Positions 28,401 through 42,563 of a stretch of DNA of 64,000 bases are shown piece by piece. Each line of letters starts with the position of its first letter. The stretch's first letter is position 1. The position numbers and the translations under genes were made by a program. A model generated the notes under the pieces. The model was not told the origin of the DNA. It was given only the letters and a program-made list of their open reading frames with translations, and made no database searches. Source of the stretch: Magallana gigas (Eukaryota); the NCBI RefSeq assembly GCF_963853765.1, contig NC_088855.1, forward strand, positions 38,316,001-38,380,000. The letters run 5' to 3'.

Positions 28401-31400
28401 CATGCAACATCTTATAACATTTATTGTTTATATAGATTCAATTGCCACAGTTTTACTTAACGTTGAAAGAGTGATTTTTACTACATTCACAATAATTGGT
28501 GCCGCCAAAAAATAGCGACTGAACCACAGTATTAGACTTTGTATATCACAAAGCTTCTACTATAACACTAGAAAAAAATTCTCAAACCATTGTTCTGGGT
28601 TTTTTGTACCAATTCGAGTGTATTTTTATTGGTAGCTATAAAACTGGATGAGTGCAATGTAAAGGGATACACGGCATGGTCAATGATGGATAACTTTGAG
28701 TGGCGAAGAGGATACTCGGAACGTTTCGGGATTCATTACGTCAATTTTAGTGACCCATCCAGACCAAGAACACCAAAAGCATCCGCAAGGTTCTACCAGC
28801 AGCTGATACGTGAGAACGGCTTTAAGCATGGCTACACGGCTATAGGAGGGCGGGGGGTCGCTCCGGCCATGGAGGGCCAGTTTTACTACGACAAGTTCCC
28901 GGATGATTTCGCCTGGAGTACAGCCACCTCAGCTTACCAGATAGAAGGAGGGTGGAACGAAGGAGGTACTATATTCAGTACAGTTGAACTGTGAATGTTA
29001 TACTTCTTTGTTTGGTGTCTAGAGCCGCATCTCTTAGAAGACTTAAAAAGAGATGACAATATATGCACTCGATTAAATGACTGATTTAGTATTTAACTGT
29101 ATCCATGTTGAATTCATCTCATAATTTCTTGAAACAGGAAGAGGACCAAGCGTTTGGGACACGTGGGTTCACGAATATACACACGTGGAGAAAAACGCCA
29201 CTGGAGATATAGCATGTGACAGTTACCATAGATACAAGGAGGATGTCCAGTTGTTGAAAAACTTAGGGGTAAAAAAAAATCATTTTCAATGTTTACCAAT
29301 TTGGTATTTGACAGTGTTAAAATTTATCTGTTTTGAGTGTTTTAAAAAGTTAAACTACACATTATGGAAGTTTTCTTTGAATTTTCCCAAAGGTTTTTCA
29401 ATGAGTATCATTTTCATTGAATAAATATTTCATTAGGTATCTCATTACCGTTTTTCCATCTCCTGGCCAAGGATTTTCCCAGACGGTACCAAAGAAAGTT
29501 TGAACAAAGAAGGCATTCAATACTACAGCAACGTGATTGATGAGCTTCTAAAGTTCAACATTAAACCCATGGCGACCCTCTTTCACTGGGATTTACCGCA
29601 AGCTTTAGAGGACCAAGGCGGGTGGCTGAACGAAAGCACGGTCTATCACTTCAGAGACTATGCCGATGTGTGTTTCCGAGAGTTTGGTGACAGGGTAGGT
29701 TAAATATATCAGTTTCATTTTTTTTTTATTACTTTTGCTCATTTTTATAAACAGTTTACTCAAGATATTCCATTCAGACATCAATATTATCTAAAATTTT
29801 AGACACAATTTAACACCCATATAGAACAAAAATGTTACGTACTCAGGAAATTACAGATGGAATATTTTTTTTTACAATCTTTCTAATTTATTTTCAATAT
29901 ATATTACATGTATATTGTGATTTAGGTTAAATTGTGGATATCTTTCAATGAACCTGGGCTAACGGCATGGACTTGTTACGGAAATGGTGGAATGGCGCCG
30001 GGTCGGCACGGGCACCCGGGGACCTACCCATATATAGTGACACGCAACATCATTCTAGCTCATGCGGAAGGTTATCATGTTTTGAAAAAGAAGTACCCTC
30101 AACAGAAGGGTATGTTGATCAGTTGGAATTTATTTCTAAACACTGTGTGCAGGACAATGTAATGGTGTTATTTGTACCAATCATATTCGTTCTTACGGTA
30201 TTTCCCCTTGCCCCTTAGGTCAGTATGGAATCACGTACAGTATTGGCTGGGCGGAACCTAAAGATCCGTATAAACCTGAGGATATTGAGGCTTCCGAGAG
30301 AAAACTACAATTTGATGCAGGGTGGTTTCTTAATCCAATATATATAAATGGCGACTACCCAGAGGTTATGAAAAAGAAGGTAGCAGAGAAAAGCGCCGCC
30401 CAAAATTTCACTTCTTCACGTCTTCCGCCATTTACAGAGGAAGAAAAACGCCGCATCAATCGTAATCCATTTTCAGTTAAATTCTATTGCTAGCCAATCA
30501 TAAGAAATAAATATTTCTCGGTAACACATCAGACAAATCTTAAAGAATTCAAAATATTCACTTTTAAAAGTTCGCGTTTTAGGCAAATCAAAAGGAATTT
30601 TTTTTCTACATTCAAATAACGTGGATGTCATTTGTTACACTTTTTGAAGAATTATAATTTTGATAAGTTTTACTAACTTAATGAATAAAAAAAAAGAAAA
30701 CAAAACAATACTTTGTGAGATATATTGCACAATTAGGCCAGCATTTTTTAAAATTTCGATTTACAAACCCGCCGACCCTATTTTTTAAAAATTCAAATAA
30801 AAATAAAAGGATCTGAACTAGCTATTTATTTTATTTTTTCCTCCGACCCGAAGTTTTCTTTCTGGTAAAAATAAAAATAAATGTTGATGCAACCACGTAT
30901 GTGTAGTCTGAATTATTGTTGTTCATGCATTGATTTAATAAAAAGACCAAGTTCTTTCCGATCAAGTCACAGGCACTAGAAGTCACAAAAAACCACCAAA
31001 GGGCCTACTCCTGTTTGCTTTCGTCCAACCCTACAATTTACGACCCTATTAAGTTTTGTGATCGGCAACTTAGCCAGAATTTCCTCAATAAAGAGAAGTT
31101 GAAGTCTTTTTCTATCACAATTCTGTAAATTAAAAAAAAAACACCTCATTGATAAGAAAATGATAAGTTACTTTAAAAAAAAACATTTTTGCAAAATAAA
31201 TTCTAGAATAATCATAATTTAACCGTTTGGAAATAGATCCTCTACATAACGGTTGTACATTTGTAAGTGGGTCATAGGGTTGGACTAATAACCCTAAACA
31301 CACTGAACACAGGTCTTATGACTGAAGGAAAGAGAATAATTTTATTTGTCATTAAGGTTAAAGCTAACAAAATAACGAAACATTTCCTTTATTAAAGGTA

Positions 31401-34400
31401 TAGTTACATAAATAAATAAAATTTTAAAAGTTATTTAGTCTTTTTTAAATAAAAAAACTTGTTTGATTTTTTACTGACATTTATGGACATGCTTCTAATC
31501 CAATTTATTTTCAGTAACAATATTTTAAATTTTGAATTTGTGAATAGCATTGTTAATTTAATCAAATAAATTATTTCTCAAACTTCTTCCTATTTTTCTG
31601 CAAGGAAGAAGTGAAAACTCCCTTATTTTTTTTTTTTGGTCTTAATGTATATGTACAGTATGTACTTGTATTTATAAAAAAAAAAAACCTTCGTTTTTAT
31701 ACATGCATGTACAATATATCAACACAAATTTTCAGTGCCCATGGATAAAATATGTTATGATAAGAACATCACCAACAACCAAAATTACTTAGATATTTTT
31801 AAAAAATGGCAGCTCCTAAACACATGTTCTTATTTTAAAAATAAAAAAAATATTGTTGAAAAATTGTTTTATTTTCATTTTTTTTCTTGACGGACAAATT
31901 TTTCAATTTTATTTTTATTTTTTTTCCCTCCTCCTCACCAAATAATTTGAAAAATATTTCGTAAATCTAAAAATAAAAAAAATGCTGGCCTTAATACGAT
32001 TGGTGTATACGTAAATGATTGAAATTTTCTGTTGAAGAAACCGGTGACTTTTTCGGATTAAACCATTACTCCTCCTCCTACTTCTTCCCAAGAGAGCACG
32101 ACATTACTGATGTGTCTTATGAGGCTGACCAAGACGTGGGAAGTGAAAATGATCCAAAGTGGCTGGGGTTGGTATCAAAACCTTTTCTTTGTATGTACCT
32201 GCATATGTAAATTACTTTTTATTTTCGTTTGCAAACTCTTTCCAAATCACTAGGTAAAAATCAGTTGAAAATGCTTTTCATTTGGTACATGTACTTCGCT
32301 CTTGCATATGGACTGATTAGCATTTGTATGTTAATGTTGATTTTCCAATTATGGTAAGACATGTATTTCACAAAAAGGAGGATGTCTCTGTTGCAGCATA
32401 GACATTTCCAAAAGATTTTTTCTTCATTACAGATCTGGATCTTCTTGGTTATTTGTCACTCCATTCGGGCTGAGAAAAGTTTTAAATTGGGTGAAAATGA
32501 CCTATAACAACATTCCCGTTTACATAACGGAAAATGGTGTATCGGATAGAAACGGATCACTTAACGACTACAGTCGCGTATACTTCTATAGAAACTATAT
32601 CAACGAAATGCTGAAAGGTACATAAGTCAAATCGAAATTTCATATGCTTCATGTAAAAAATAAACTCAGTAGTTTTTTTTTTTACATGTCGACAGTCTCT
32701 TCATGTTTTGTGCTATTAATTCTACGGAATTATTATCTTTTTATTCAGCTGTTAAACTCGATGGCTGCAATGTGAAAGGTTATGCAGCATGGTCATTTAT
32801 GGACAACTTTGAATGGAACACTGGCTACGCCGAGAAGTTTGGAATGCACTACGTTAACTTCAGTGATCCAGAACGACCTCGAACCCCGAAACTATCAGCA
32901 GTCCTCTACAACCAACTGATCAAAGACAACGGTTTTCTTGAAGATGCTGCTACTTCCCCTTCTAAAGGAAAAGAGCTGGGTGTCTACCGAGAGCTTCCGT
33001 ATGCAGATAAGTTCTATTACGGAACATTTCCGAAAGAATTTGCTTGGGGCGCCTCCACTTCGGCTTATCAAATAGAAGGAGCCTGGAATGAAGACGGTAA
33101 AATATATGTACGGTTAATTAATTGGAATAATTTTAAGCATTTGCTATAATGGTTTAATGTGTGGCTTTATATCTCATTCAGGTAAAGGAGAAAGTAATAT
33201 TGACAAAATGACTCATAGTGACTTTGAATCAACCGATGGAAACATTGCCTGCAATAGTTATAAAAAATTTAAAGAAGATGTGAGAATATTAAAAGAAACG
33301 CACGTAAGTGATTTAAATATAAATCTGCATCAAGGTATGAAACTTTCTTTCCTTTACTTCAAAATTTACATGAATAAGTATTCATCTATAATTACGGTTA
33401 TATTTTGATGTTTCAGGTGTCATTTTACCGTTTTTCAATATCCTGGAGTCGAATTTTACCTGAAGGAAATGTCAGCGATGTTAATCACTTAGGGATTCAA
33501 TACTACATGAACATGACAGACGCACTGATAGACGCAGGAATCACCCCTGTTGTGGTCATGCATTACTATGACATGCCGATTACAATATATAACCAAGGCG
33601 GATGGAAAAATCCAAACACAATTCATCTCTTTGTTGAATATGCACGAGTTTTATTCAAAGAGCTAGGTTCCAGGGTACTGTACAATATTTATATAATAAT
33701 GTTACATTTATTTCAGCGGTCTGTCTGTTTTGTAATTAATTCGATGTCACAATTATATTGACTCATGATTGAATTGTTGTAGGTCAAATATTGGATAACT
33801 ATCAATGACCCATACTCTGTGTCAGTTGGTTTGGATGCTAATGAAGAAAACCCACATACAACTGGACATAATTTGATAAAAGCCCATGCATATGTGTACA
33901 AATTGTACAAGGAGGAATTCAAGGAACAACAAAAAGGTTTAGCGTATTTACAATACACAACAATTATTATCACAATTAATAAATTAACAAATATTTAGAA
34001 TTGGGTCATTTAAATACATTATTTTAATTTAGGTCACGTGGGAATTTCTCTTCGCGCTGATTGGTTTGAACCTGTAACACCTACCGACCCATCTGATATT
34101 GAAGCCACCAACAGGAAAATGGAACATTCTTTTGGATGGTTTGCGCATCCAATTTTTGTTAACGGCGACTATTCACAACTGCTCAAGTCAATATTAGAGA
34201 AAAAAAATACAACTATCCCCAAATTTACAGATTACGAATCAACGCTGATTAAAGGTTAGATATGGTAGTTAATCCATTATGTGAACATTCTGTGTGTGTG
34301 GTCATTGCAGATAACAGTTGGCTCTCGTTAAAAATGTATTGAACTATAACATTTTTTCTGTAGATTCTTCTGATTTCTTGGGATTGAATTTCATATCAAC

Positions 34401-36968
34401 ATTTAAAGTAAAATCAAAAGAAAATGATTTTAAAGGATTTGAGTTTGAGACAGATACAGAGATAACTTTCAATTCCTCGTGGCCTAGGTGAGTGTCAAAA
34501 GTACATTTAACTTTATCATAAGTTTACTGTGTCCAGTGAATACTAATTACCGATAAAAACAGATAACAGATAATTAAATTATCAGAGGGGAAATCACAAT
34601 CAACTAATACGTTACTAAAAAAAATTATTTGTGCTTAGAATAGAATAATTACTTTTAGAATAAATAAAAAAATCCAGTGTCCAAAATTTACCATAAGCAA
34701 TAAGGTTAGTGTTTGAAGAAAGATATTTCAAACTTATATATTCAGGTGCAATGGTTTTCAAAATAATTCCATATACATGTTATTTTACTTTGACAGAAGC
34801 AGCATAGCAACCATAAGGTTTGTACCGTTTGGTCTTCGAAAGGTTTTGAACTGGATTAAGGATAAATATCACAATGTCACAGTATACGTCACAGAGGCTG
34901 GGTTTCCAGATGACTCGGGGACTCTACAGGATAACACTAGGGTAAAATTCTACAAGGAGTACGTCAATGAAGTATTAAAAGGTGCGTTCGTTAATACAGT
35001 AAACAATAGCATCAGCTTGTAGTCACTATCGGGATGATACTCAATTATATCGCATTAATGATGTTGAGATTTTGAGAGTTAACCAGAACAATAGACTTGA
35101 GTACATTAACTGGAACTGTATTTATGCCAAAATTGTATTATTGTTACAATGTATTTACATTCTTTTGTTTTGTTTCTATTTTCAGCTGTTAGATTGGATA
35201 AATGTAATGTTAAAGGATTCAACATTAAAAGCCTGATAGACGATGTCGATTACACCGGAAGTATAAAACATAAATACGGAATTTACAAAGTGGATTTCAA
35301 TGATCCATCAAGACCTCGAACAAGAAAATCTTCAGCTAATTTCATAACAAATATTATAAAAGATAACGGCTTTCTACAGGGAAAATCTTACTCTGTTGAA
35401 TCAGGCATAGGGGAATTTAATCCAAACTATCCTTACAGGCCATTGAGACAGGAAAATGAGATGTATTCTGGTAGTTTTCCTCACGGTTTTGTATGGAGCA
35501 CAGCTACAGCGGCTTACCAGGTAGAAGGCGGATGGGACGCCGATGGTAAGTCAAAATAAGATTGATGAAAGTTTTTGAAAGTATCCTTGTAGAATAAATG
35601 TACATTAGCTATACCTCCATATTTTATTCCAATACATGAAGACAAATTGACGCGAACGTCTGAGAAAACATTGGATTGAAACAGTTACTGTGTTTTTAGA
35701 AGATTTCAGAGAATTGTGCTTAATTATTATGATGCATGTTTTTTAAAATCAGGTAATTAAGATGAAATAAAGAATGTAGCTTAAAATGCATCACCGTGAT
35801 AATAAGGTGAAACAGTTTAATACTGAGAAACTTTGACTTTACATTACATGATGGCAAAATTTGAAATCGTCAACAGTTACTGTATTAATTAAGTAATAGG
35901 AACCAATATCAACTGCTAGGTGTTTATATTAATTTACGCTTATCTTGTAAAATACGTTCTTAACTAAATTATTAATAACAGCAACTTTTTAATTTAATTG
36001 ATTTTGGTTTACTAACATACAAAAACTATGGTAATTATACCCTCACATGGAATACGCAGGTAAAGGCAAAAGCAACTGGGATGTTTTCTCTCAAGAGCCT
36101 GGACATATAGTTAATAATGACAATGGAAACATAGCCTGTGACAGTTACCACAATTATAGAACAGACGTAGAGCTTCTGAAGAATCTAAAGGTTTGAGTAC
36201 TAATACACATTTTATTGGAAATGCAACAAGTTACTGTTGAAAAAATGTCATGTTGCTGTAAAAGTTTCCTAGAACAAACCCGATTTACAAACTGTTGTCT
36301 ACATGGTTTCTATGCACATTGCTAGGTAACACACTACAGATTCTCTATATCGTGGTCTCGGATACTGCCACTGGGGACGCTGGAAAAAATCAACCAACCA
36401 GGGATAGATTATTACAACAAGTTGATCGATGCCCTTCTAGAGGCTAATATCGCTCCAATGGTGACCCTCTACCACTGGGACACCCCACAGGCCTTCAACA
36501 ACAGCGGGGGCTGGCAAAATAGCACTATATCTGACCATTTTGCCAACTACTCCAGATTGTGCTACGAACGGTTTGGTGACAGGGTAATGATATTGAGAAA
36601 TCTACCTTGTGTCGGTGATTCAGATTCTGTCATAATATTGTCATATCAAACCGCTGCTATAACTTCTTTTATATTTCATTCGTCAGGTAAAACTTTGGAT
36701 AACTCTGAATGAACCCTGGGTAGTCTCTAACCTAGGCTACGAGCTTGGCGTGAATGCCCCTGGTATAAAAGGGAGGGGGGATCGTATCTACCAAGTGGCT
36801 CACAACCTCATCAAATCTCACGCCAAAGCTTACAGAGTCTATGAAAAAGAATTCAAACAAAAACAAAAAGGTAATCATGCTTTATTCGGATATAAAACAT
36901 TAAAATATGTAATAATCTAGGAATGATTTAGAGAATATCGAATGATATGTAACAGTTCTGAATATATT

Positions 36969-37048
<80 letters not shown>

Positions 37049-40000
37049 GTATATAGTAATACGACTACATTTAATTTTTACCAATGTTCAGATTAATGTA
37101 TATGCATAATAACAAGAGAGAAGAAATTAGACTTCAGATAATTATTATAACAGGACAAGTGGGTATAACGCTGAATACGGACTGGCAGGTTCCAAAGAAC
37201 CCGGAAAACCCCAGCGACCTGGAGGCCTCCGAACGAGCCATCGACTTCATGTTAGGGTGGTTCCTCAATCCAGTGATGAAGGGAGATTATCCCAAAGTGA
37301 TGAGAGATCAGGTAGACAGGAAAAGTCGGGAACAGGGACTGCCAACTAGCCGGCTTACTAGGTTTACCCAAGCTGAACAAATGGATATAAAAGGTGTACT
37401 GATGATGGAGTTTAATTGAATGTCGAAGGGGGGATTCAAATAGGAAATTCGGGGGTTTTTTTCCAGAAACTTTAATAGTTGCTTCAAAAATTAAACTTAA
37501 ACTTTATGCATAGAGTTAAGTTTTTCAAATAATATTTACGAAATATAAAAAAAACTGTATTGCAGGTTCATACGATTTTCTTGGAATAAATTTCTACACG
37601 TCGAACGTTGTGACCTACAAACCATCGACTGGACAGAGCTACAGTGCTGACGGTGACATCGATATCACAAAGGACCCGGAGTGGCTGGGGTGACCACGAT
37701 TTCTTATATTTCTTCTTACAGAATTTTGTTATGTCTTTAAAAATTTAATAACGAAAGTAAATCAGTACGTGACATCTAAAGGATCCGTCAAATGATTTTG
37801 AAAAGTAGAATGATACTTTGAAAATTTATTAAGTTTTCAAGTTTACTAACATTATTTTATCTTTTACTTTGGTAATTTGTATGGTGTAGAAGTACATGTC
37901 AATCAAAATACAATAAACCATCATAAAGATGTGATACGGGTATATTTTTCGAAAAAAAAATCGTTACGTCCTGGGACAGAAAGAGTTCTCAATTAATTTG
38001 CTATACTCATCAATATTTAAGATTGCTTTTTCTTACTGAATTATATTCATCAATAGGAATTGATCAGCAATAATTTTTCATACCTGTGATTGAATACAGA
38101 TCTGGCTCCGACTGGCTAAAGGTGACCCCTGTCGGGATCCGCCGAATGCTGAACTGGATCAAGTACACGTACGGAGATTTCCCCATTTACATAACAGAAA
38201 ATGGAATCTCGGATAGAAACGGATCTCTACAGGACGAGCATAGAATATTTTATTACAAACATTACATTAATAATGTTCTTAAAGGTAAGGATCATTAGCA
38301 AATCTGTATTGTATTCTTGATGTAAAATTTTATTTAAGAAAAAGAAGCAAAAATAAAATTAAAACAACATAAAACATGTCCAATCAGAAATACAAGTATA
38401 TAAAAGCTACAATGTCTTGATAGCTAAAATTTATATGCAAACAAATTCGGTTATAGACGAAATCGGATTTGTCCCTCTGACCAATTCTCATAGGTGATGC
38501 AACACGGTATATCAAATGTATTTACTGTCCTGTGAGCATGATCTTGAGAAGAGAATATCAAATTGATATCTTTAAGATAACGATATTCCATATAATAATT
38601 CAATCTTTTTAAAATTTGGATTTTCTTTTTCTTTTAGCCATCGTGACTTTTTGAAGAAAAAAAATTATTTTCATGACAGAAATTAAATGGTTGGAATGTG
38701 TATCAATTATATATCGCTATTTTTGTTCGCTACCATCCAATTTTAAACTACATAAATGATAAATGCATACAGTTTTCCTGTTGCATATTATATTTTTAAA
38801 GTGAACATTCTTGTATCTTGTACACATAGCTATACGTCTTGATGGGGTAAACGTTCGAGGGTACACGGCATGGTCATTAATGGATAACTTTGAGTGGGCA
38901 CGTGGGTATACGGAACGCTTCGGACTTCACTATGTTAACTTCAGCGATCCTGAGCGACCACGCACACCAAAGGAAAGCGCCCGTTTCTTTAAAAAACTCA
39001 TTGAAAACAATGGCTTTCCTGACGAAAAGTCGAAGTTCTCTTTTCCGTTTGCATTGGAACCAGCCTTTCCAGGAAATAATCCTTACCGGGCACTTTTTGA
39101 GGAAGACGACTTCTACTACGATTCTTTCCCAGAAGGCTTTGCGTGGAGCACTGCCACATCGTCGTATCAAGTGGAAGGAGCTTGGAATAAGGATGGTAAG
39201 ATTTAAATGGGATCATTCCTGCCATATATATATATTAAGAAATGTTAAAGGAGGTTTGAAATATTCTTTGATATTTATAATTACAGAATATAATATCCCA
39301 ATTAATTTTTACTGTACTAGTATTTGACCAGCATTGTAAAAAATCCTGATTTTAAAATACGAAGGTAAAAATTTAAAAATCCGTAGCGGCACTCATACTC
39401 ATGAAAAGTAATCATTAGCTAACGCTCTAATAAACTGAAAATTAATATAAAAAAAATAGTTGAAAATAATTTTAATTTTCGAAAAGTGGATGATTACTTA
39501 CTAAAAGGAGTTATCTCCACAGGGGGAACCTCTGTCATTCAGTCAGCTAAATGGTAACTGAATGGTCTGGAAATGTGACTGAATGACATACATGTAGCTA
39601 GGCCAATCAGTCAGATTTTAGTAACCTTTTAGTTGACTGAATGGCATAACTTCATCCTGTCCCCAATGATTTGATCCTTACAATATCCTTAAATGACTGT
39701 CGGATCTATTCTTCCTTTCAGGTAAAGGTCTTGGAATATGGGATGTCTTCAGCCACACACCTGGTAAGGTAGTCAACAATGACACGGGTGACGTTGCATG
39801 CAATAGCTATGACAAGTTTCACGAAGATATCAAACTGTTAATGGATATGAAGGCAAGTATTTTAAGATGCAGATGTATCCGGTTTTTTTTACCAGTTAGC
39901 AGTAAGATTAAATTTTTTTCTTTGTAAGCAATCGTTCGGATAAAAAATACAATTGTACCGTTATAAGTCTGATTCTCCCTTTTATGAATCAAGTTAAAAG

Positions 40001-40658
40001 GCTATTTTTTTCTTTTGATTTTGTCATCGCGAGTTTTTCTTAAACATGACTGTATTTATATTTTAATTTAAATCATAATGCTTTTAGATATCATAATTAT
40101 AGATGTAACGCACGACTTTTAAGTTTTCAAAAGGACGATTACGGATAAAGCAGTTACTTGAAAATATAATCCCAACTCAATAAAGTTCATGCGCGGATCC
40201 AGAATTAATTTCCAGGGGGGGGGGGTGTTTCAACGGTTATTTGAGTTTGCCCGGGGGGGGGGTGGTGTCCGAAGCATATTTTGGTAATTTTATAATTCAA
40301 ATTAATGAAATTAGAATTTTGCAGACCCCCTGACCCCCCTTATGAGTTTAACTATATAGTTATATATTTACTTTACGCTTAACCTGCGTTTAGGTTACAC
40401 ACTACCGTTTCTCGCTATCATGGCCACGAATCTTACCTGATGGAACCACACAGAATGTGAACTCCCTGGGAATACAGTACTACAGTAGTCTGATTGATGC
40501 AGTCCTAGACGCCGGAATCGCCCCAATGGTCACTCTGTACCACTGGGATCTCCCACAAGCCCTAATGCAATATGGCGGCTGGCAAAGTGAACGCACGGCC
40601 GAATTGTTTGCCGAATACGCTAGGTTTTGCTTTTCTCTGTTTGGAGATCGGGTATGTG

Positions 40659-40727
<69 letters not shown>

Positions 40728-41041
40728 ATTTTAAATACGGTTACTGAAGGAAGCAGTAAACGGATAAAGAGTTTCTTTTCTCCTAGGTAAAGTTTTGGAT
40801 AACATTGAATGAACCGTTTGTCGTCTCAAACCATGGCTACGAGATCGGAGTTATGGCACCTGGTTTAACAGGAAAGGGCGATCGAATATACCAAGCTGGT
40901 CATAATTTGATTAAGGCGCATGCGAAGGCGTACCACATCTATCAGAACGAGTTCAAACGGGCTCAAAAGGGTACGTGAATATTAAGTGCTTTTGTGGTTC
41001 CATCAGGTAACGTATATCACAGCGAATTTTATTTACATGTA

Positions 41042-41086
<45 letters not shown>

Positions 41087-42550
41087 TAAACTTTTAAGTT
41101 GGGGAAAAAAGAGATAAAACGTCAGAAGAAGGTGTTGTAAAATATGTGATCATCAGAACTATTATTCTTCTTGAAATTTTGAAATGAGTGTGTTTTTTGT
41201 GCTCAAAACATTTTTATACTATTGTATTGCAAATGCAAATAGTTTTAAAAACAAAAACCAACTCAATTCAGGCATCATTGGTATAACTTTAAACACGGAC
41301 TGGCAAGTTCCAGAAGATCCCAACAGTGAGAGAGATTTACAGGCGTCGCACCGGGCCATCCACTTCATGTATGGCTGGTTCTTAAACCCAGTTATGAAGG
41401 GAGACTACCCCGCAATCATGAAGGAACAAGTCGACCGGAAAAGTCGTGCGCAGGGATACAAAGAAAGTAGACTTCCGGAATTCTCAGCAACGGAAAAGGA
41501 TTATATTAAAGGTATTCACCTTAACTTTACAAAGTTAACGCATACCAGATATCTTCGTTACACATAATAAAATTAATAACTAAACAGGATTAAAAATAAT
41601 TGTGATCACTGCATTATGCATAAGATGTAAATAATTATACACTTTGTGCGTGCCAGGTACTTACGACTTCCTAGGCATGAATTTTTATACGTCAAACCTG
41701 GTTTCATCCATTGATAATATAAACCAGAGTTACTACGGGGACCAGGATGTCAACTCCACGAAAGACCCTTCTTGGCTCGGGTAATGTCGCACAATAGGTT
41801 CTTTTATACATCATGCTGATGCAAATGAAGTACATCTTTGCTCGAATTATACAATGATATATAATGTAGATCTTTCATTCATATGATGACCTGATTGTTT
41901 TAGATCGGGGTCATCTTGGCTCAAAGTGACTCCTAAAGGAATTCGACGTATGCTGAATTGGGTGAAATATACCTACGGTGATTTCCCAATCTACATCACG
42001 GAAAACGGAGTTTCGGACCTTAACGGAACCATAAAGGATGAACATAGGATCTTTTATTACAAACATTATATCAACAATGTTCTAAAAGGTAGGTTTTGAA
42101 ATGATGGAATAACTTTTTAGAAGTAATTTTTTTATTGTAAAATCGCAGTTGTCTCTCCTTTGAGTGACATTACATTCTACTGACGATAGATAACGGGTTT
42201 TTTTTTCAGCCATCCGACTTGACGGAATAGACGTTCGTGGATACACGGCATGGTCATTAATGGATAACTTCGAATGGGCAAGAGGATATTCGGAACGCTT
42301 CGGTCTTCACTATGTTAACTTCAGCGATCCCGCCCGACCACGTACACCAAAAGCAAGTGCGCGGTACTATAGGTCTATTATCGAAAAAAATGGATTCAAG
42401 AAAGAAACAGTTAATAACAATGAGAATAAAACACCAGCAAACAGTAACAATCGAACACCTAACCCAGTTTCTGGGGTACAAAAGACAGTTATCTCTTTTC
42501 AAGTCCTAACTGGTTTTGTCATAGGTGTTGTGTTATGGAATTTTAAATAA
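19496..42550 (+). CDS. Six-domain GH1 beta-glycosidase (lactase/phlorizin hydrolase-like), gene 2; complete, 2974 aa
   Basis: 43 exons: 19496-19544 (signal [16 protein letters not shown]), 21606-21722; D1 22081-22211, 23092-23349, 23523-23949, 24065-24194, 24336-24520, 24723-25052; D2 25478-25608, 25940-26200, 26316-26499, 27404-27628, 27722-27848, 27966-28150, 28636-28965; D3 29138-29268, 29437-29694, 29926-30109, 30219-30461, 32038-32167, 32433-32617, 32749-33096; D4 33182-33303, 33417-33674, 33783-33936, 34033-34254, 34364-34487, 34797-34981, 35186-35545; D5 36060-36190, 36326-36583, 36687-36870, 37154-37393, 37566-37689, 38100-38284, 38830-39195; D6 39722-39852, 40394-40651, 40787-40970, 41272-41511, 41657-41780, 41904-42088, 42210-42550. 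Total 8925 nt = 2974 aa + stop, with consistent phases. NEP and TENG are intact in D1, D2, D3, D5 and D6; D4 has NDP and TEAG. One GC-AG intron (39853). Confidence 0.93.
19681..20168 (+). mobile_element. 3' fragment of HINE family A in intron 1 of gene 2
   Basis: Close direct copy of about 18610-19060. Ends AACGGAAGACCTA-CTCGTTActcgTAACGAG-ATCGTATCTAGT. Bounded by a perfect 13-bp inverted repeat, ACTAGATACGATC (19681) / GATCGTATCTAGT (20156). Confidence 0.75.
21421..21487 (+). CDS. Candidate alternative first coding exon (1b) of GH1 gene 2, encoding a second signal peptide
   Basis: aaaaATGG start; [22 protein letters not shown]; phase-1 donor G|GTAGGT compatible with the acceptor at 21606 (118-nt intron), giving ...[13 protein letters not shown]. 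Confidence 0.7.
22277..22557. mobile_element. Poly-G/C-containing MITE with 10-bp TIRs (CAGGCACGTA...TACGTGCCTG)
   Basis: Perfect terminal inverted 10-mers. A related copy lies in opposite orientation at about 60291-60596. Confidence 0.65.
26865..27336. mobile_element. Poly-G/C-rich non-autonomous element, intronic; related copy at 51714-52018 in opposite orientation
   Basis: Termini GGCGTCGTAAC / TTCCGACGCC are imperfect inverted repeats. Internal blocks (GAGAAGTGGGAGTCATAGG; GTTAGACCTAACCATTAG) match the reverse complement of 51830-51970. Confidence 0.7.
27861..27930. repeat. Tandem duplication of about 35 bp in an intron
   Basis: G(A)nTACTTGCTTTATGTTTGATGACTTT x2. Confidence 0.9.
30736..31990. 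mobile_element. PIF/Harbinger-type non-autonomous element (1255 bp) in a gene 2 intron
   Basis: TIR GGCCAGCATTTTT / AAAAATGCTGGCC with flanking TTA on both sides (30733-35, 31991-93). No transposase ORF. Confidence 0.8.
36971..37046. repeat. (AT)n microsatellite
   Basis: Read directly. Confidence 0.98.
39524..39665. repeat. Small imperfect fold-back (possible MITE relic) in an intron
   Basis: TGTCATTCAGTCAGCTAA versus TTAGTTGACTGAATGGCA inverted arms, with an internal GACTGAATG copy. No clear TSD. Confidence 0.4.
40188..40342. mobile_element. Truncated poly-G element beginning CATGCGCGGATCCAG
   Basis: GC-rich terminal motif followed by G-tracts; no matching second terminus. Confidence 0.45.
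40667..40724. repeat. (CT)n microsatellite
   Basis: Read directly. Confidence 0.98.
41045..41082. repeat. (TA)n microsatellite
   Basis: Read directly. Confidence 0.98.
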
Positions 42551-42557
42551 TTCGATA

Positions 42558-42563
42558 AATAAA
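42558..42563 (+). terminator. Candidate polyadenylation signal of GH1 gene 2
   Basis: AATAAA just after the stop at 42550. Very close to the stop, so a more distal site is possible. Confidence 0.35.

What the first reader, a model, noticed from the sequence alone, without database searches (positions are those of the whole stretch)
33020..35400. Gene 2 domain 4: a degenerate but frame-intact GH1 module (NEP to NDP, nucleophile kept)
Seen: acid/base motif TINDP; TLYHWDLP becomes VMHYYDMP; the loop exon is 154 versus 184 nt; GLN(F/H)Y becomes GLNFI; the nucleophile survives as VTEAG; WSLMDNFEW becomes KSLIDDVDY. All seven exons and splice sites are intact. Established: GH1 members lacking the acid/base Glu include myrosinases (Gln, still active on activated substrates) and Klotho/lactase-like proteins (non-catalytic or binding roles), and the LPH pro-region assists folding. 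Inference: a retained pseudo-enzyme acting as a carbohydrate-binding module, spacer or intramolecular chaperone, or an enzyme limited to good leaving groups.
Basis: partly seen in the sequence, partly recalled or inferred. Interest (0 to 1): 0.8.

Follow-up and report, generated by a model that had tools for sequence, protein, structure and literature searches.

The report
Conserved non-catalytic GH1 module in oyster
The fourth of six glycosidase-like modules in an oyster digestive-type enzyme gene has lost most of its sugar-cutting residues yet is expressed, spliced in and kept by selection in several oyster species. It is a new example of the inactive GH1 modules already described in sea-hare, clam and shipworm enzymes.

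Summary
Window 33021-35400 (+) encodes an open, GT-AG-spliced GH1 module with [23 protein letters not shown] and KSLIDDVDY, and a 154-nt loop exon against 184 nt elsewhere. RNA contigs from three studies plus raw reads support every junction and run from domain 3 through 4 into 5, with no skipping.

It is not decaying. Intact orthologues occur in four other oysters at 70-91% identity. Nine of 13 pocket residues are replaced, and 11 of the 13 positions are invariant across the five species. dN/dS against a close species is 0.16 (95% interval 0.10-0.22), against 0.06 and 0.11 for the catalytic neighbours.

The neighbouring gene carries a milder paralogue, also NDP. Other bivalve multi-GH1 proteins have a degenerate module at the same relative place. 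A predicted structure of the C. virginica orthologue is a confident full barrel, nearest to Aplysia akuBGL. Its first domain has the same Glu-to-Asp change, keeps the nucleophile and was inactive in an assay.

Best reading: a retained pseudo-enzyme module whose role is probably folding or scaffolding. That role is inferred, not tested. It is a new member of a known kind, of modest interest.

The parts
33021..33096 (+). Start of module 4 ([25 protein letters not shown]). This is the 3' part of the exon 32749-33096 shared with the end of module 3 and the 28-aa linker.
   Evidence: Spliced alignment. The donor at 33096/33097 is confirmed by the RNA joint 33095>33181 in four runs.
33182..33303 (+). 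Exon 2, 122 nt (131 in canonical modules). SNID replaces S(I/N)WD.
33417..33674 (+). Exon 3, 258 nt. It carries YRFSISW and [10 protein letters not shown], where the glycone-binding His and the neighbouring Trp have both become Tyr.
   Evidence: Pfam PF00232 E=1e-30. RNA joints. Alignment.
33783..33936 (+). Exon 4, 154 nt against 184. It carries WITINDP (acid/base Glu replaced by Asp) and a loop 10 aa shorter.
   Evidence: RNA joints.
34033..34254 (+). Exon 5, 222 nt against 240-243.
34364..34487 (+). Exon 6, 124 nt. It carries GLNFIS, where the catalysis-related Tyr has become Ile.
34797..34981 (+). Exon 7, 185 nt. It carries [10 protein letters not shown]: the nucleophile Glu is kept, and the Asn of TENG has become Ala.
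35186..35545 (+). Exon 8. It holds the end of module 4 ([10 protein letters not shown]...[10 protein letters not shown], to about 35379), a 32-aa linker ([18 protein letters not shown]) and the start of module 5.
21647..42560 (+). Gene 2 as far as it was traced. It has six GH1 modules starting at 21653, 24983, 28896, 33027, 35476 and 39126, then a Ser/Thr/Pro/Asn linker and a hydrophobic C-terminal tail before the stop. The exon holding the start codon was not located.
   Evidence: The six-module orthologues P0292 (C. virginica, 2986 aa) and P0290 (Saccostrea, 2964 aa) are.
3760..6210 (+). Paralogous B-type module of gene 1 (g1B). It carries [19 protein letters not shown] and WSLMDGIDW, with a 142-nt loop exon. 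It is 51% identical to module 4.

Best explanation
Module 4 is a folded, expressed and selectively maintained non-catalytic GH1 module. It sits inside a six-module protein that resembles lactase-phlorizin hydrolase and is probably membrane-anchored. The other five modules keep the full catalytic set.

Its (beta/alpha)8 barrel is intact, but the -1 subsite is rebuilt. The acid/base Glu is Asp. The glycone-binding His, two Trp and Glu, and the catalysis-related Tyr and Asn, are replaced by Tyr, Lys, Tyr, Asp, Ile and Ala. Ordinary retaining beta-glycosidase chemistry is therefore lost or severely crippled (inferred).

The most likely role is structural. It would help the neighbouring catalytic modules fold, or hold them at a set spacing and orientation, as proposed for akuBGL GH1D1, the first CjCel1A domain and LpMDGH1 domains 1 and 3. 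This role is inferred by analogy and was not tested.

Evolutionary history (shown):
- The module lineage lost the acid/base Glu after the oyster lineage split from the Pinctada lineage.
- It was copied when the whole gene duplicated, before Crassostrea and Saccostrea diverged.
- The gene-2 copy then changed further and has since been held nearly constant.
For: Expression and inclusion:
- RNA contigs of three studies span modules 3, 4 and 5 with all junctions.
- Raw-read depth in module 4 is similar to that of its neighbours.

Fold:
- Pfam GH1 matches every exon piece tested (exons 3, 4, 5, 7 and 8).
- The AlphaFold2 model of the C. virginica orthologue (75% identical, identical 13-residue pocket signature) has pLDDT 94.9 and pTM 0.94.
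- Its best PDB match is akuBGL 8IN1, with TM 0.96.

Pocket:
- The canonical signature is QHWNENYENWEWF. Module 4 reads QYYNDNIEAKDYY.
- The same or nearly the same signature occurs in L001, C. virginica, Saccostrea and L009.

Selection:
- The orthologous exons are intact and of identical length in L001 and L005; in the L009 orthologue, also intact, exon 4 is 163 nt against 154.
- dN/dS is 0.156 (bootstrap 95% interval 0.10-0.22, maximum 0.27 in 300 replicates). Module 3 gives 0.06 and module 5 gives 0.11.
- Seven of ten RNA-run variants in module 4 are synonymous.
- 58% of columns are invariant across the five species.

Context:
- Other bivalve proteins of five to eight modules carry a degenerate module between an A-type module and the C-type catalytic modules.

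Precedent:
- In the crystal structure of akuBGL GH1D1, D192 replaces the acid/base while E404 is kept. The carboxylates lie 8.4 A apart instead of about 5 A. The glycone-binding and catalysis-related residues are not conserved, and the recombinant domain is inactive (bioRxiv 10.1101/2023.06.04.543649).
- LpMDGH1 keeps its two inactive modules in the mature protein (PMC5840672).
Against: - No activity, binding or folding assay exists for any oyster module. A chaperone or scaffold role is only a proposal in the cited papers as well.
- The nucleophile Glu and a carboxylate at the acid/base position are both strictly conserved. A purely structural role does not obviously require this.
- The rebuilt pocket residues are held constant (11 of 13 invariant, against 57% of the other columns). 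That could point to a ligand site, although the difference is not significant (Fisher p=0.08), and buried residues are conserved in any case.
- I folded the C. virginica orthologue and not the window's own spliced protein, because that protein has no reference.
Confidence: 0.6

Rival explanations
1. Module 4 is a ligand-binding module. The rebuilt pocket is rich in Tyr and Lys and still carries Asp and Glu. It would bind an algal glycan, an oligosaccharide product or a dietary inhibitor without cleaving it. That would target the enzyme or protect its catalytic modules.
For: The derived pocket residues are fixed across five oyster species, while the former catalytic Tyr position varies freely as I, H or R. 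There are long conserved lineage-specific motifs around the pocket, such as KSLxDxVDYTG..HKYGIY and EMEHSxGWFA. Sabbadin et al. list 'substrate interactions' as a possible role of the inactive LpMDGH1 modules (PMC5840672). It is established that the pseudo-glycosidase pocket of beta-Klotho binds a ligand.
Against: No binding data exist. The excess conservation of pocket positions is not significant (p=0.08). The aromatic Trp platforms typical of sugar binding are the residues that were lost.
Confidence: 0.2
2. Module 4 is still an enzyme, with Asp as a weak acid/base. It would act on activated substrates, or on a glycone different from glucose or galactose.
For: The nucleophile Glu, the Asn before the acid/base, the Gln of YQxEG and a carboxylate at the acid/base position are all conserved. 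GH1 modules reading NDP with otherwise canonical pockets exist elsewhere (P0102 and P0097).
Against: His, Trp, Tyr, Asn, Trp, Glu and Trp of the -1 subsite are all replaced. The Tyr that positions the nucleophile is I, H or R in different species, so it is unconstrained. akuBGL GH1D1, with the same Glu-to-Asp change, has its carboxylates 8.4 A apart and no activity on oNP-galactoside (bioRxiv 10.1101/2023.06.04.543649).
Confidence: 0.1
3. Module 4 is a pro-region-like segment. It would be needed only during biosynthesis and removed by proteolysis, like domains I-II of mammalian lactase-phlorizin hydrolase.
For: The window has RPLR in the linker between modules 4 and 5. The linkers flanking the module are rather long and conserved.
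Against: The RPLR motif is not conserved: it reads RALV in C. virginica, RPLP in Saccostrea and RALP in L009. The module is internal, so removing it would cut the protein in two. The shipworm homologue keeps all six modules when mature (PMC5840672).
Confidence: 0.07
4. Module 4 is a neutrally decaying remnant or a mere spacer on its way to loss.
For: It evolves faster than its neighbours. Identity between species is 71-75% against 76-90%, and its omega is higher than that of modules 3 and 5 pooled in 293 of 300 bootstraps.
Against: dN/dS is 0.16 and never exceeded 0.27 in bootstraps. The frames are intact and the exon lengths identical in L001 and L005, and the L009 orthologue is also intact apart from a longer exon 4; the annotated proteins of two more species are uninterrupted. 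The model folds with high confidence. The paralogue g1B is conserved in Saccostrea as well.
Confidence: 0.03

Closest known systems
akuBGL GH1D1 (Aplysia kurodai beta-glucosidase, PDB 8IN1; bioRxiv 10.1101/2023.06.04.543649)
   Same: It is a GH1 barrel fused to a catalytic GH1 module in one mollusc digestive protein. The acid/base Glu is replaced by Asp and the nucleophile Glu is kept. The glycone-binding and catalysis-related residues are not conserved. It is the best PDB match by sequence and by fold. The motif DP(F/Y)SV follows the Asp in both.
   Different: akuBGL has two modules, with the inactive one first. Here the inactive module is fourth of six. Orthology is unresolved: a Lymnaea homologue of GH1D1 falls in an unresolved polytomy under the site-heterogeneous model. 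Module 4 has additional changes, such as Trp to Lys and TENG to TEAG.
LpMDGH1 domains 1 and 3 (shipworm Lyrodus pedicellatus six-module GH1; PMC5840672; P0304 here)
   Same: It is a six-module bivalve GH1 protein in which the module after the first catalytic one lacks catalytic residues. Its inactive modules are kept in the mature protein. Folding or substrate-interaction roles are proposed.
   Different: The shipworm protein is soluble and lacks a C-terminal hydrophobic tail. Its inactive module 3 has lost the nucleophile as well (signature EASNEHFRSFEMY). Its first module is also degenerate, whereas oyster modules 1-3 are canonical.
CjCel1A first domain (Corbicula japonica; Sakamoto et al. 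2009, as cited in PMC5840672)
   Same: It is a tandem GH1 protein of a bivalve digestive gland whose first module is predicted to be inactive and was proposed to act as a chaperone.
   Different: It has two modules only.
Pro-region (domains I-II) of vertebrate lactase-phlorizin hydrolase
   Same: These are degenerate GH1 modules in a multi-GH1, membrane-anchored brush-border-type enzyme, and they assist folding of the catalytic modules (Jacob et al. 2002, as cited in PMC5840672).
   Different: They are N-terminal, are removed by proteolysis and lack the nucleophile (LPH II signature NHWHETYGNREGF). Module 4 is internal, keeps the nucleophile and has no conserved cleavage motif.
Klotho and beta-Klotho KL domains
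   Same: They are GH1-fold pseudo-enzymes in which one catalytic Glu is missing per domain, reused for binding.
   Different: Each has two domains and acts as a vertebrate FGF co-receptor. They are not close in the trees. The resemblance is by analogy only.

Membership tests
Glycoside hydrolase family 1 (fold and sequence family, Pfam PF00232) | Collinear match to the GH1 profile over the whole module | tested here: met
   The exon pieces match PF00232 positions 73-156, 157-213, 215-284, 335-391 and 396-453. Identity to the canonical modules of the same gene is 42-45%.
Glycoside hydrolase family 1 (fold and sequence family, Pfam PF00232) | Complete (beta/alpha)8 barrel | tested here: met
   The AlphaFold2 model of the C. 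virginica orthologue has pLDDT 94.9 and pTM 0.94. Foldseek gives TM 0.95-0.96 to GH1 structures. The window's own protein was not folded because it has no reference.
Catalytically competent retaining GH1 beta-glycosidase | Acid/base Glu in the NEP motif | tested here: not met
   The motif is TINDP. Asp is conserved in five oyster species and in the paralogue.
Catalytically competent retaining GH1 beta-glycosidase | Nucleophile Glu in the TENG motif | tested here: met
   The motif is VTEAG or TEVG, and the Glu is invariant.
Catalytically competent retaining GH1 beta-glycosidase | Glycone-binding and catalysis-related residues: His and Trp of YHWD, Tyr of NxY, Asn of TENG, Trp of AWS, and Glu-Trp of NFEW | tested here: not met
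   These positions read Y, Y, I, A, K, D and Y (signature QYYNDNIEAKDYY).
Catalytically competent retaining GH1 beta-glycosidase | Measured hydrolytic activity | not testable with these tools
   This needs a bench assay.
Non-catalytic GH1 modules of molluscan tandem GH1 beta-glucosidases (akuBGL GH1D1, LpMDGH1 domains 1 and 3, CjCel1A domain 1) | Fused in one polypeptide with catalytically intact GH1 modules in a mollusc | tested here: met
   Five canonical modules lie in the same gene. RNA contigs join modules 3, 4 and 5.
Non-catalytic GH1 modules of molluscan tandem GH1 beta-glucosidases (akuBGL GH1D1, LpMDGH1 domains 1 and 3, CjCel1A domain 1) | At least one catalytic Glu lost, plus loss of the glycone-binding residues | tested here: met
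   The Glu-to-Asp change with the nucleophile kept is the same as in akuBGL GH1D1.
Non-catalytic GH1 modules of molluscan tandem GH1 beta-glucosidases (akuBGL GH1D1, LpMDGH1 domains 1 and 3, CjCel1A domain 1) | Common descent with those modules | tested here: inconclusive
   The LG+G4 tree groups all degenerate modules (SH-aLRT 89). The C20 mixture tree collapses this group. The AU test does not reject one clade of the 18 bivalve B-position modules (p=0.19).
LPH pro-region | N-terminal position and proteolytic removal | tested here: not met
   The module is internal, fourth of six. RPLR in the linker is not conserved in three other oysters. Actual cleavage cannot be tested here.
Myrosinase-type GH1 | Gln at the acid/base position with an otherwise intact glycone site | tested here: not met
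   The residue is Asp and not Gln, and the glycone site is rebuilt.

The most novel reading that the evidence does not exclude
The rebuilt pocket, with fixed Tyr, Tyr, Lys, Asp, Tyr and Tyr around a retained Glu and Asp, would be a new binding site evolved inside a GH1 barrel. It might bind an algal glycan or a dietary polyphenol inhibitor. Module 4 would then act as an in-built lectin or inhibitor decoy for the five catalytic modules of the same protein. The repeated Glu-to-Asp change at this module position in several bivalve lineages would reflect selection for binding without cleavage.
Probability: 0.15. Interest if true: 0.6.

Novelty: new member of a known kind. Interest (0 to 1): 0.33.

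Why it matters
This is a clean, well-supported case of a pseudo-enzyme module kept by selection inside a giant tandem glycosidase. Orthologues, a milder paralogue and a still-canonical sister module in Pinctada bracket the time at which catalysis was lost. Together they make a natural series for asking what inactive GH1 modules do, a question the akuBGL and shipworm papers leave open.

The data also show that GH1 proteins of six or more modules, in the same module order, are general in bivalves: oysters, scallops, clams and Mya. Papers up to 2026 describe them instead as a speciality of wood-eating bivalves. Beyond that, the finding is an ordinary annotation result.

Tried and rejected
- **Window's own protein not referable.** The spliced 452-aa protein has no reference. 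I therefore could not send it to structure prediction, the PDB search or the whole-protein homology search. I used exon pieces and the C. virginica orthologue P0292:1505-1955 instead.
- **Representative search.** Searching with exon 3 found no full-length close relative. The best hit was a 99-aa exon fragment (P0012), which led to locus L009.
- **First long-protein search.** One search missed the oyster proteins because of the length limit. A longer query found them.
- **Origin of degenerate modules.** The LG+G4 trees suggested a single origin for all degenerate mollusc modules. The site-heterogeneous tree does not support this, and the AU test is indecisive. I make no claim either way.
- **Pocket conservation.** The excess conservation of pocket positions in module 4 is not significant (p=0.08).
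- **Saturated comparisons.** dS is saturated for the distant comparisons (L009 and the gene 1 against gene 2 paralogues). Only the window against L001 ratio is used.
- **Furin-type site.** RPLR is present in the linker but is not conserved.
- **Other features in the region.** Rfam found nothing in 20000-44000. An 86-aa antisense ORF over exon 4 has no read support, since all stranded reads lie one way.
- **Odd RNA joint.** One joint, 34860>36124 with GA..AA ends, appears in a single contig with only 27 nt on one side. I take it to be an assembly chimera between similar modules, not splicing.
- **Earlier notes of the scan.** They held nothing relevant.
- **Complex prediction.** I did not run it, because I make no binding claim.


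Full report
**What the window holds.** Sequencing runs that contain the stretch are labelled as oyster or oyster metagenome. tblastn and my own spliced aligner found ten GH1 modules on the + strand.
- Four belong to gene 1. Its modules span 3-14458 and its C-terminal tail runs a little further. The gene is cut by the start of the window.
- Six belong to gene 2. Its modules span about 21647-42397 and its coding sequence ends near 42560.
- Each module has the same exon pattern of about 131, 258, 184, 240-243, 124-130 and 185 nt. One exon bridges each pair of adjacent modules.
- Both genes end in a Ser/Thr/Pro-rich linker and a hydrophobic tail of about 20 residues directly before the stop.

**Checking the observation.** Module 4 of gene 2 consists of 33021-33096, 33182-33303, 33417-33674, 33783-33936, 34033-34254, 34364-34487, 34797-34981 and 35186-35400 (that exon continues to 35545). 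All introns are GT..AG, and the product is 452 aa without a stop. The loop exon is 154 nt against 184 nt. Exons 2 and 5 are also shorter than in the canonical modules. The exon pieces match Pfam PF00232 in order.

**Expression and splicing.** I laid one raw-read RNA run and the contigs of three RNA runs from three further studies on 32350-38300.
- All seven introns of module 4 appear as exact joints in all three contig sets. Five appear in the raw reads.
- Single contigs run from module 3 through module 4 into module 5. Examples are a 4206-nt record in X16 and a 2780-nt record in X15.
- Raw-read depth in module 4 is like that of its neighbours.
- All but one of the stranded reads have the first mate on the - strand. 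Under the usual protocol this means a + strand RNA.
- No indel was reported.
- The only non-canonical joint (34860>36124, GA..AA, one contig, 27 nt on one side) looks like an assembly chimera.

**Active-site anatomy.** I aligned all the modules and read 13 positions that line the -1 subsite in GH1. Choosing these positions rests on established knowledge of the family.
- The positions are Gln of YQxEG, His and Trp of YHWD, Asn and Glu of NEP, Asn of HN, Tyr of NxY, Glu and Asn of TENG, Trp of AWS, Glu and Trp of NFEW, and Phe of ERFG.
- The eight canonical window modules read QHWNENYENWEWF.
- Module 4 reads QYYNDNIEAKDYY, so nine of 13 are changed.
- Gln, Asn-Asp, Asn and the nucleophile Glu remain.
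- The corresponding module of gene 1 (g1B, 3760-6210) reads QQSNDNYENWDWF. It also has NDP and a shortened loop exon (142 nt), and is 51% identical to module 4.

**Orthologues and selection.**
- An exon-3 search led to genomic contigs of two other oysters. L001 and L005 are a close species (91% identical). L009 is a more distant one (70%).
- The whole module is intact in both. In L001 and L005 all eight exon segments have identical lengths; in L009 six of the eight match, exon 4 is 163 nt against 154, and the last aligned segment is 3 nt shorter.
- Annotated six-module proteins supply further orthologues: C. virginica P0292:1509-1951 (75%) and Saccostrea echinata P0290:1483-1928 (72%). Saccostrea P0288 carries the g1B type.
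- The pocket signature is identical in L001 and C. virginica. It reads QYFNDNHEAKDYY in L009 and QYFNDNREVKDYY in Saccostrea.
- Eleven of the 13 positions are therefore fixed. The former catalytic Tyr position varies freely as I, H or R.
- Against L001, dN/dS is 0.156 (bootstrap 95% interval 0.10-0.22, maximum 0.27). Module 3 gives 0.06 and module 5 gives 0.11 on the same contig. Module 4 exceeds the pooled neighbours in 293 of 300 replicates.
- Between species, module 4 is 71-75% identical against 76-90% for the five catalytic modules. g1B shows the same pattern: 73% against 83-91%.
- Seven of ten variants seen in the RNA runs are synonymous.
- The module is under clear purifying selection, somewhat relaxed compared with its neighbours. 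Decay is excluded.

**Fold.** The window's spliced protein has no reference, so I folded the C. virginica orthologue with a 78-module alignment. The result was pLDDT 94.9 and pTM 0.94, a complete barrel, with only the shortened loop near residue 175 dipping to about 71. The best PDB matches by sequence and by fold are both Aplysia kurodai akuBGL, 8IN1. I could not read the coordinates, so I did not examine pocket geometry.

**Wider context.** Long-protein searches returned GH1 proteins of five to eight modules from Pinctada, scallops, mussels, Dreissena, Sinanodonta, venerid clams, Mya, Mactra and the shipworm Lyrodus.
- Almost all of them carry a degenerate module between an A-type catalytic module and a run of C-type catalytic modules. 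Sinanodonta P0167 is an exception besides Pinctada (below): its complete modules all read as canonical.
- Many of these degenerate modules have Asp at the acid/base position: DDP and SDP in scallops, NDP in Mya and Dreissena, and HDP in Mytilus.
- Under a site-heterogeneous model, the following groupings are robust: the module 4 clade, the g1B clade and their union (each 100/100), and their sister relation to Pinctada P0165:980-1421 (98/96).
- That Pinctada module still has a nearly canonical signature, QHFNENYENWEWF.
- The oyster lineage therefore lost the acid/base Glu after separating from the Pinctada lineage. The loss came before the duplication that produced genes 1 and 2, which itself predates the Crassostrea-Saccostrea split.
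- Whether all degenerate mollusc modules share one origin is unresolved (AU p=0.19).

**Literature.**
- Sabbadin et al. (PMC5840672) purified LpMDGH1 from a shipworm. It has six GH1 modules. Modules 1 and 3 lack the NE and TENG residues, and all six are kept in the mature protein. [quoted passage not shown]
- The akuBGL structure paper (bioRxiv 10.1101/2023.06.04.543649) reports that GH1D1 has D192 in place of the acid/base with E404 kept. The carboxylates are 8.4 A apart. Neither the glycone-binding nor the catalysis-related residues are conserved. The recombinant domain has no activity on an o-nitrophenyl glycoside, and a chaperone role is proposed.
- CjCel1A of Corbicula is cited in both papers for the same idea.

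**Interpretation.**
- Shown: an intact, expressed, confidently folding GH1 barrel, conserved by selection, that lacks the acid/base Glu and most of the -1 subsite.
- Inferred: it does not hydrolyse ordinary beta-glycosides.
- Most likely but untested: it serves folding or architecture of the six-module protein.
- A ligand-binding role for the rebuilt and fixed pocket is the main rival. Residual or altered catalysis is less likely. Proteolytic removal lacks a conserved site.

**Verdict.** The finding is a new member of a known kind of non-catalytic GH1 module, and interest is modest.

Noticed in passing
window 3760-6210 (+), gene 1: The neighbouring gene has its own B-type module ([22 protein letters not shown], 142-nt loop exon). 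Only four of 13 pocket residues are changed, and the nucleophile motif YVTENG is intact. It is conserved in Saccostrea (P0288:1483-1933, 73%). It is a milder intermediate between the canonical Pinctada module and module 4.
   Followed up: partly
window 42398-42560 and 14459-14640 (+); C-termini of P0292, P0290, P0288, P0165, P0283, P0301: Both oyster genes, and the multi-GH1 proteins of Pinctada, Pecten and Mya, end in a Ser/Thr/Pro linker and a hydrophobic tail of about 20 residues right at the C-terminus. This could be a GPI signal or a membrane anchor. The shipworm protein lacks it. PMC5840672 states that lack of a membrane region is common among invertebrate multi-domain GH1 proteins.
   Followed up: partly
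whole of gene 2 (21647-42560) and proteins P0283-P0304: GH1 proteins of six or more modules occur in oysters (two tandem genes), scallops (7-8 modules), venerid clams, Mya and Mactra. PMC5840672 (2018) calls the six-module form unique to the shipworm. A 2026 preprint (10.64898/2026.07.25.740686) treats it as an adaptation of wood-eating bivalves. The database proteins contradict this.
   Followed up: partly
B-position modules of several bivalves: The acid/base Glu is replaced by Asp again and again at this module position: oysters NDP, scallops DDP and SDP, Mya and Dreissena NDP, Mytilus HDP, and also akuBGL GH1D1 (Lymnaea's first domain reads DDP too). The Pinctada module sister to the oyster ones keeps Glu. 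Whether this is one old change or repeated convergence is unresolved, and why the replacement is Asp each time is unexplained.
   Followed up: partly
window 23523-23949 (+), gene 2 module 1: Exons 4 and 5 of the usual pattern are fused into one 427-nt exon (184+243). This is an intron loss specific to this module.
   Followed up: no
window 9896-12952, with an ORF at 10343-11329 (-): Module D of gene 1 has an unusually long intron of about 3 kb. It contains a 328-aa ORF on the opposite strand with no Pfam match. It may be a remnant of a mobile element.
   Followed up: partly
window 35642-35681, intron between modules 4 and 5: A stretch of about 40 nt inside the intron is covered by several RNA contigs and reads. 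They run on into unrelated sequence on both sides (loose ends at 35642 and 35681). It is probably a short dispersed repeat also present in other transcripts.
   Followed up: no
window 38284 onward (module 5, last exon junction): Reads and contigs of three runs continue after 38284 into 38 letters that are not at the next window exon. In two runs the contig then joins back to 32787 (tables 5c and 7). This is likely cross-assembly between the near-identical module ends of paralogous modules or alleles.
   Followed up: no
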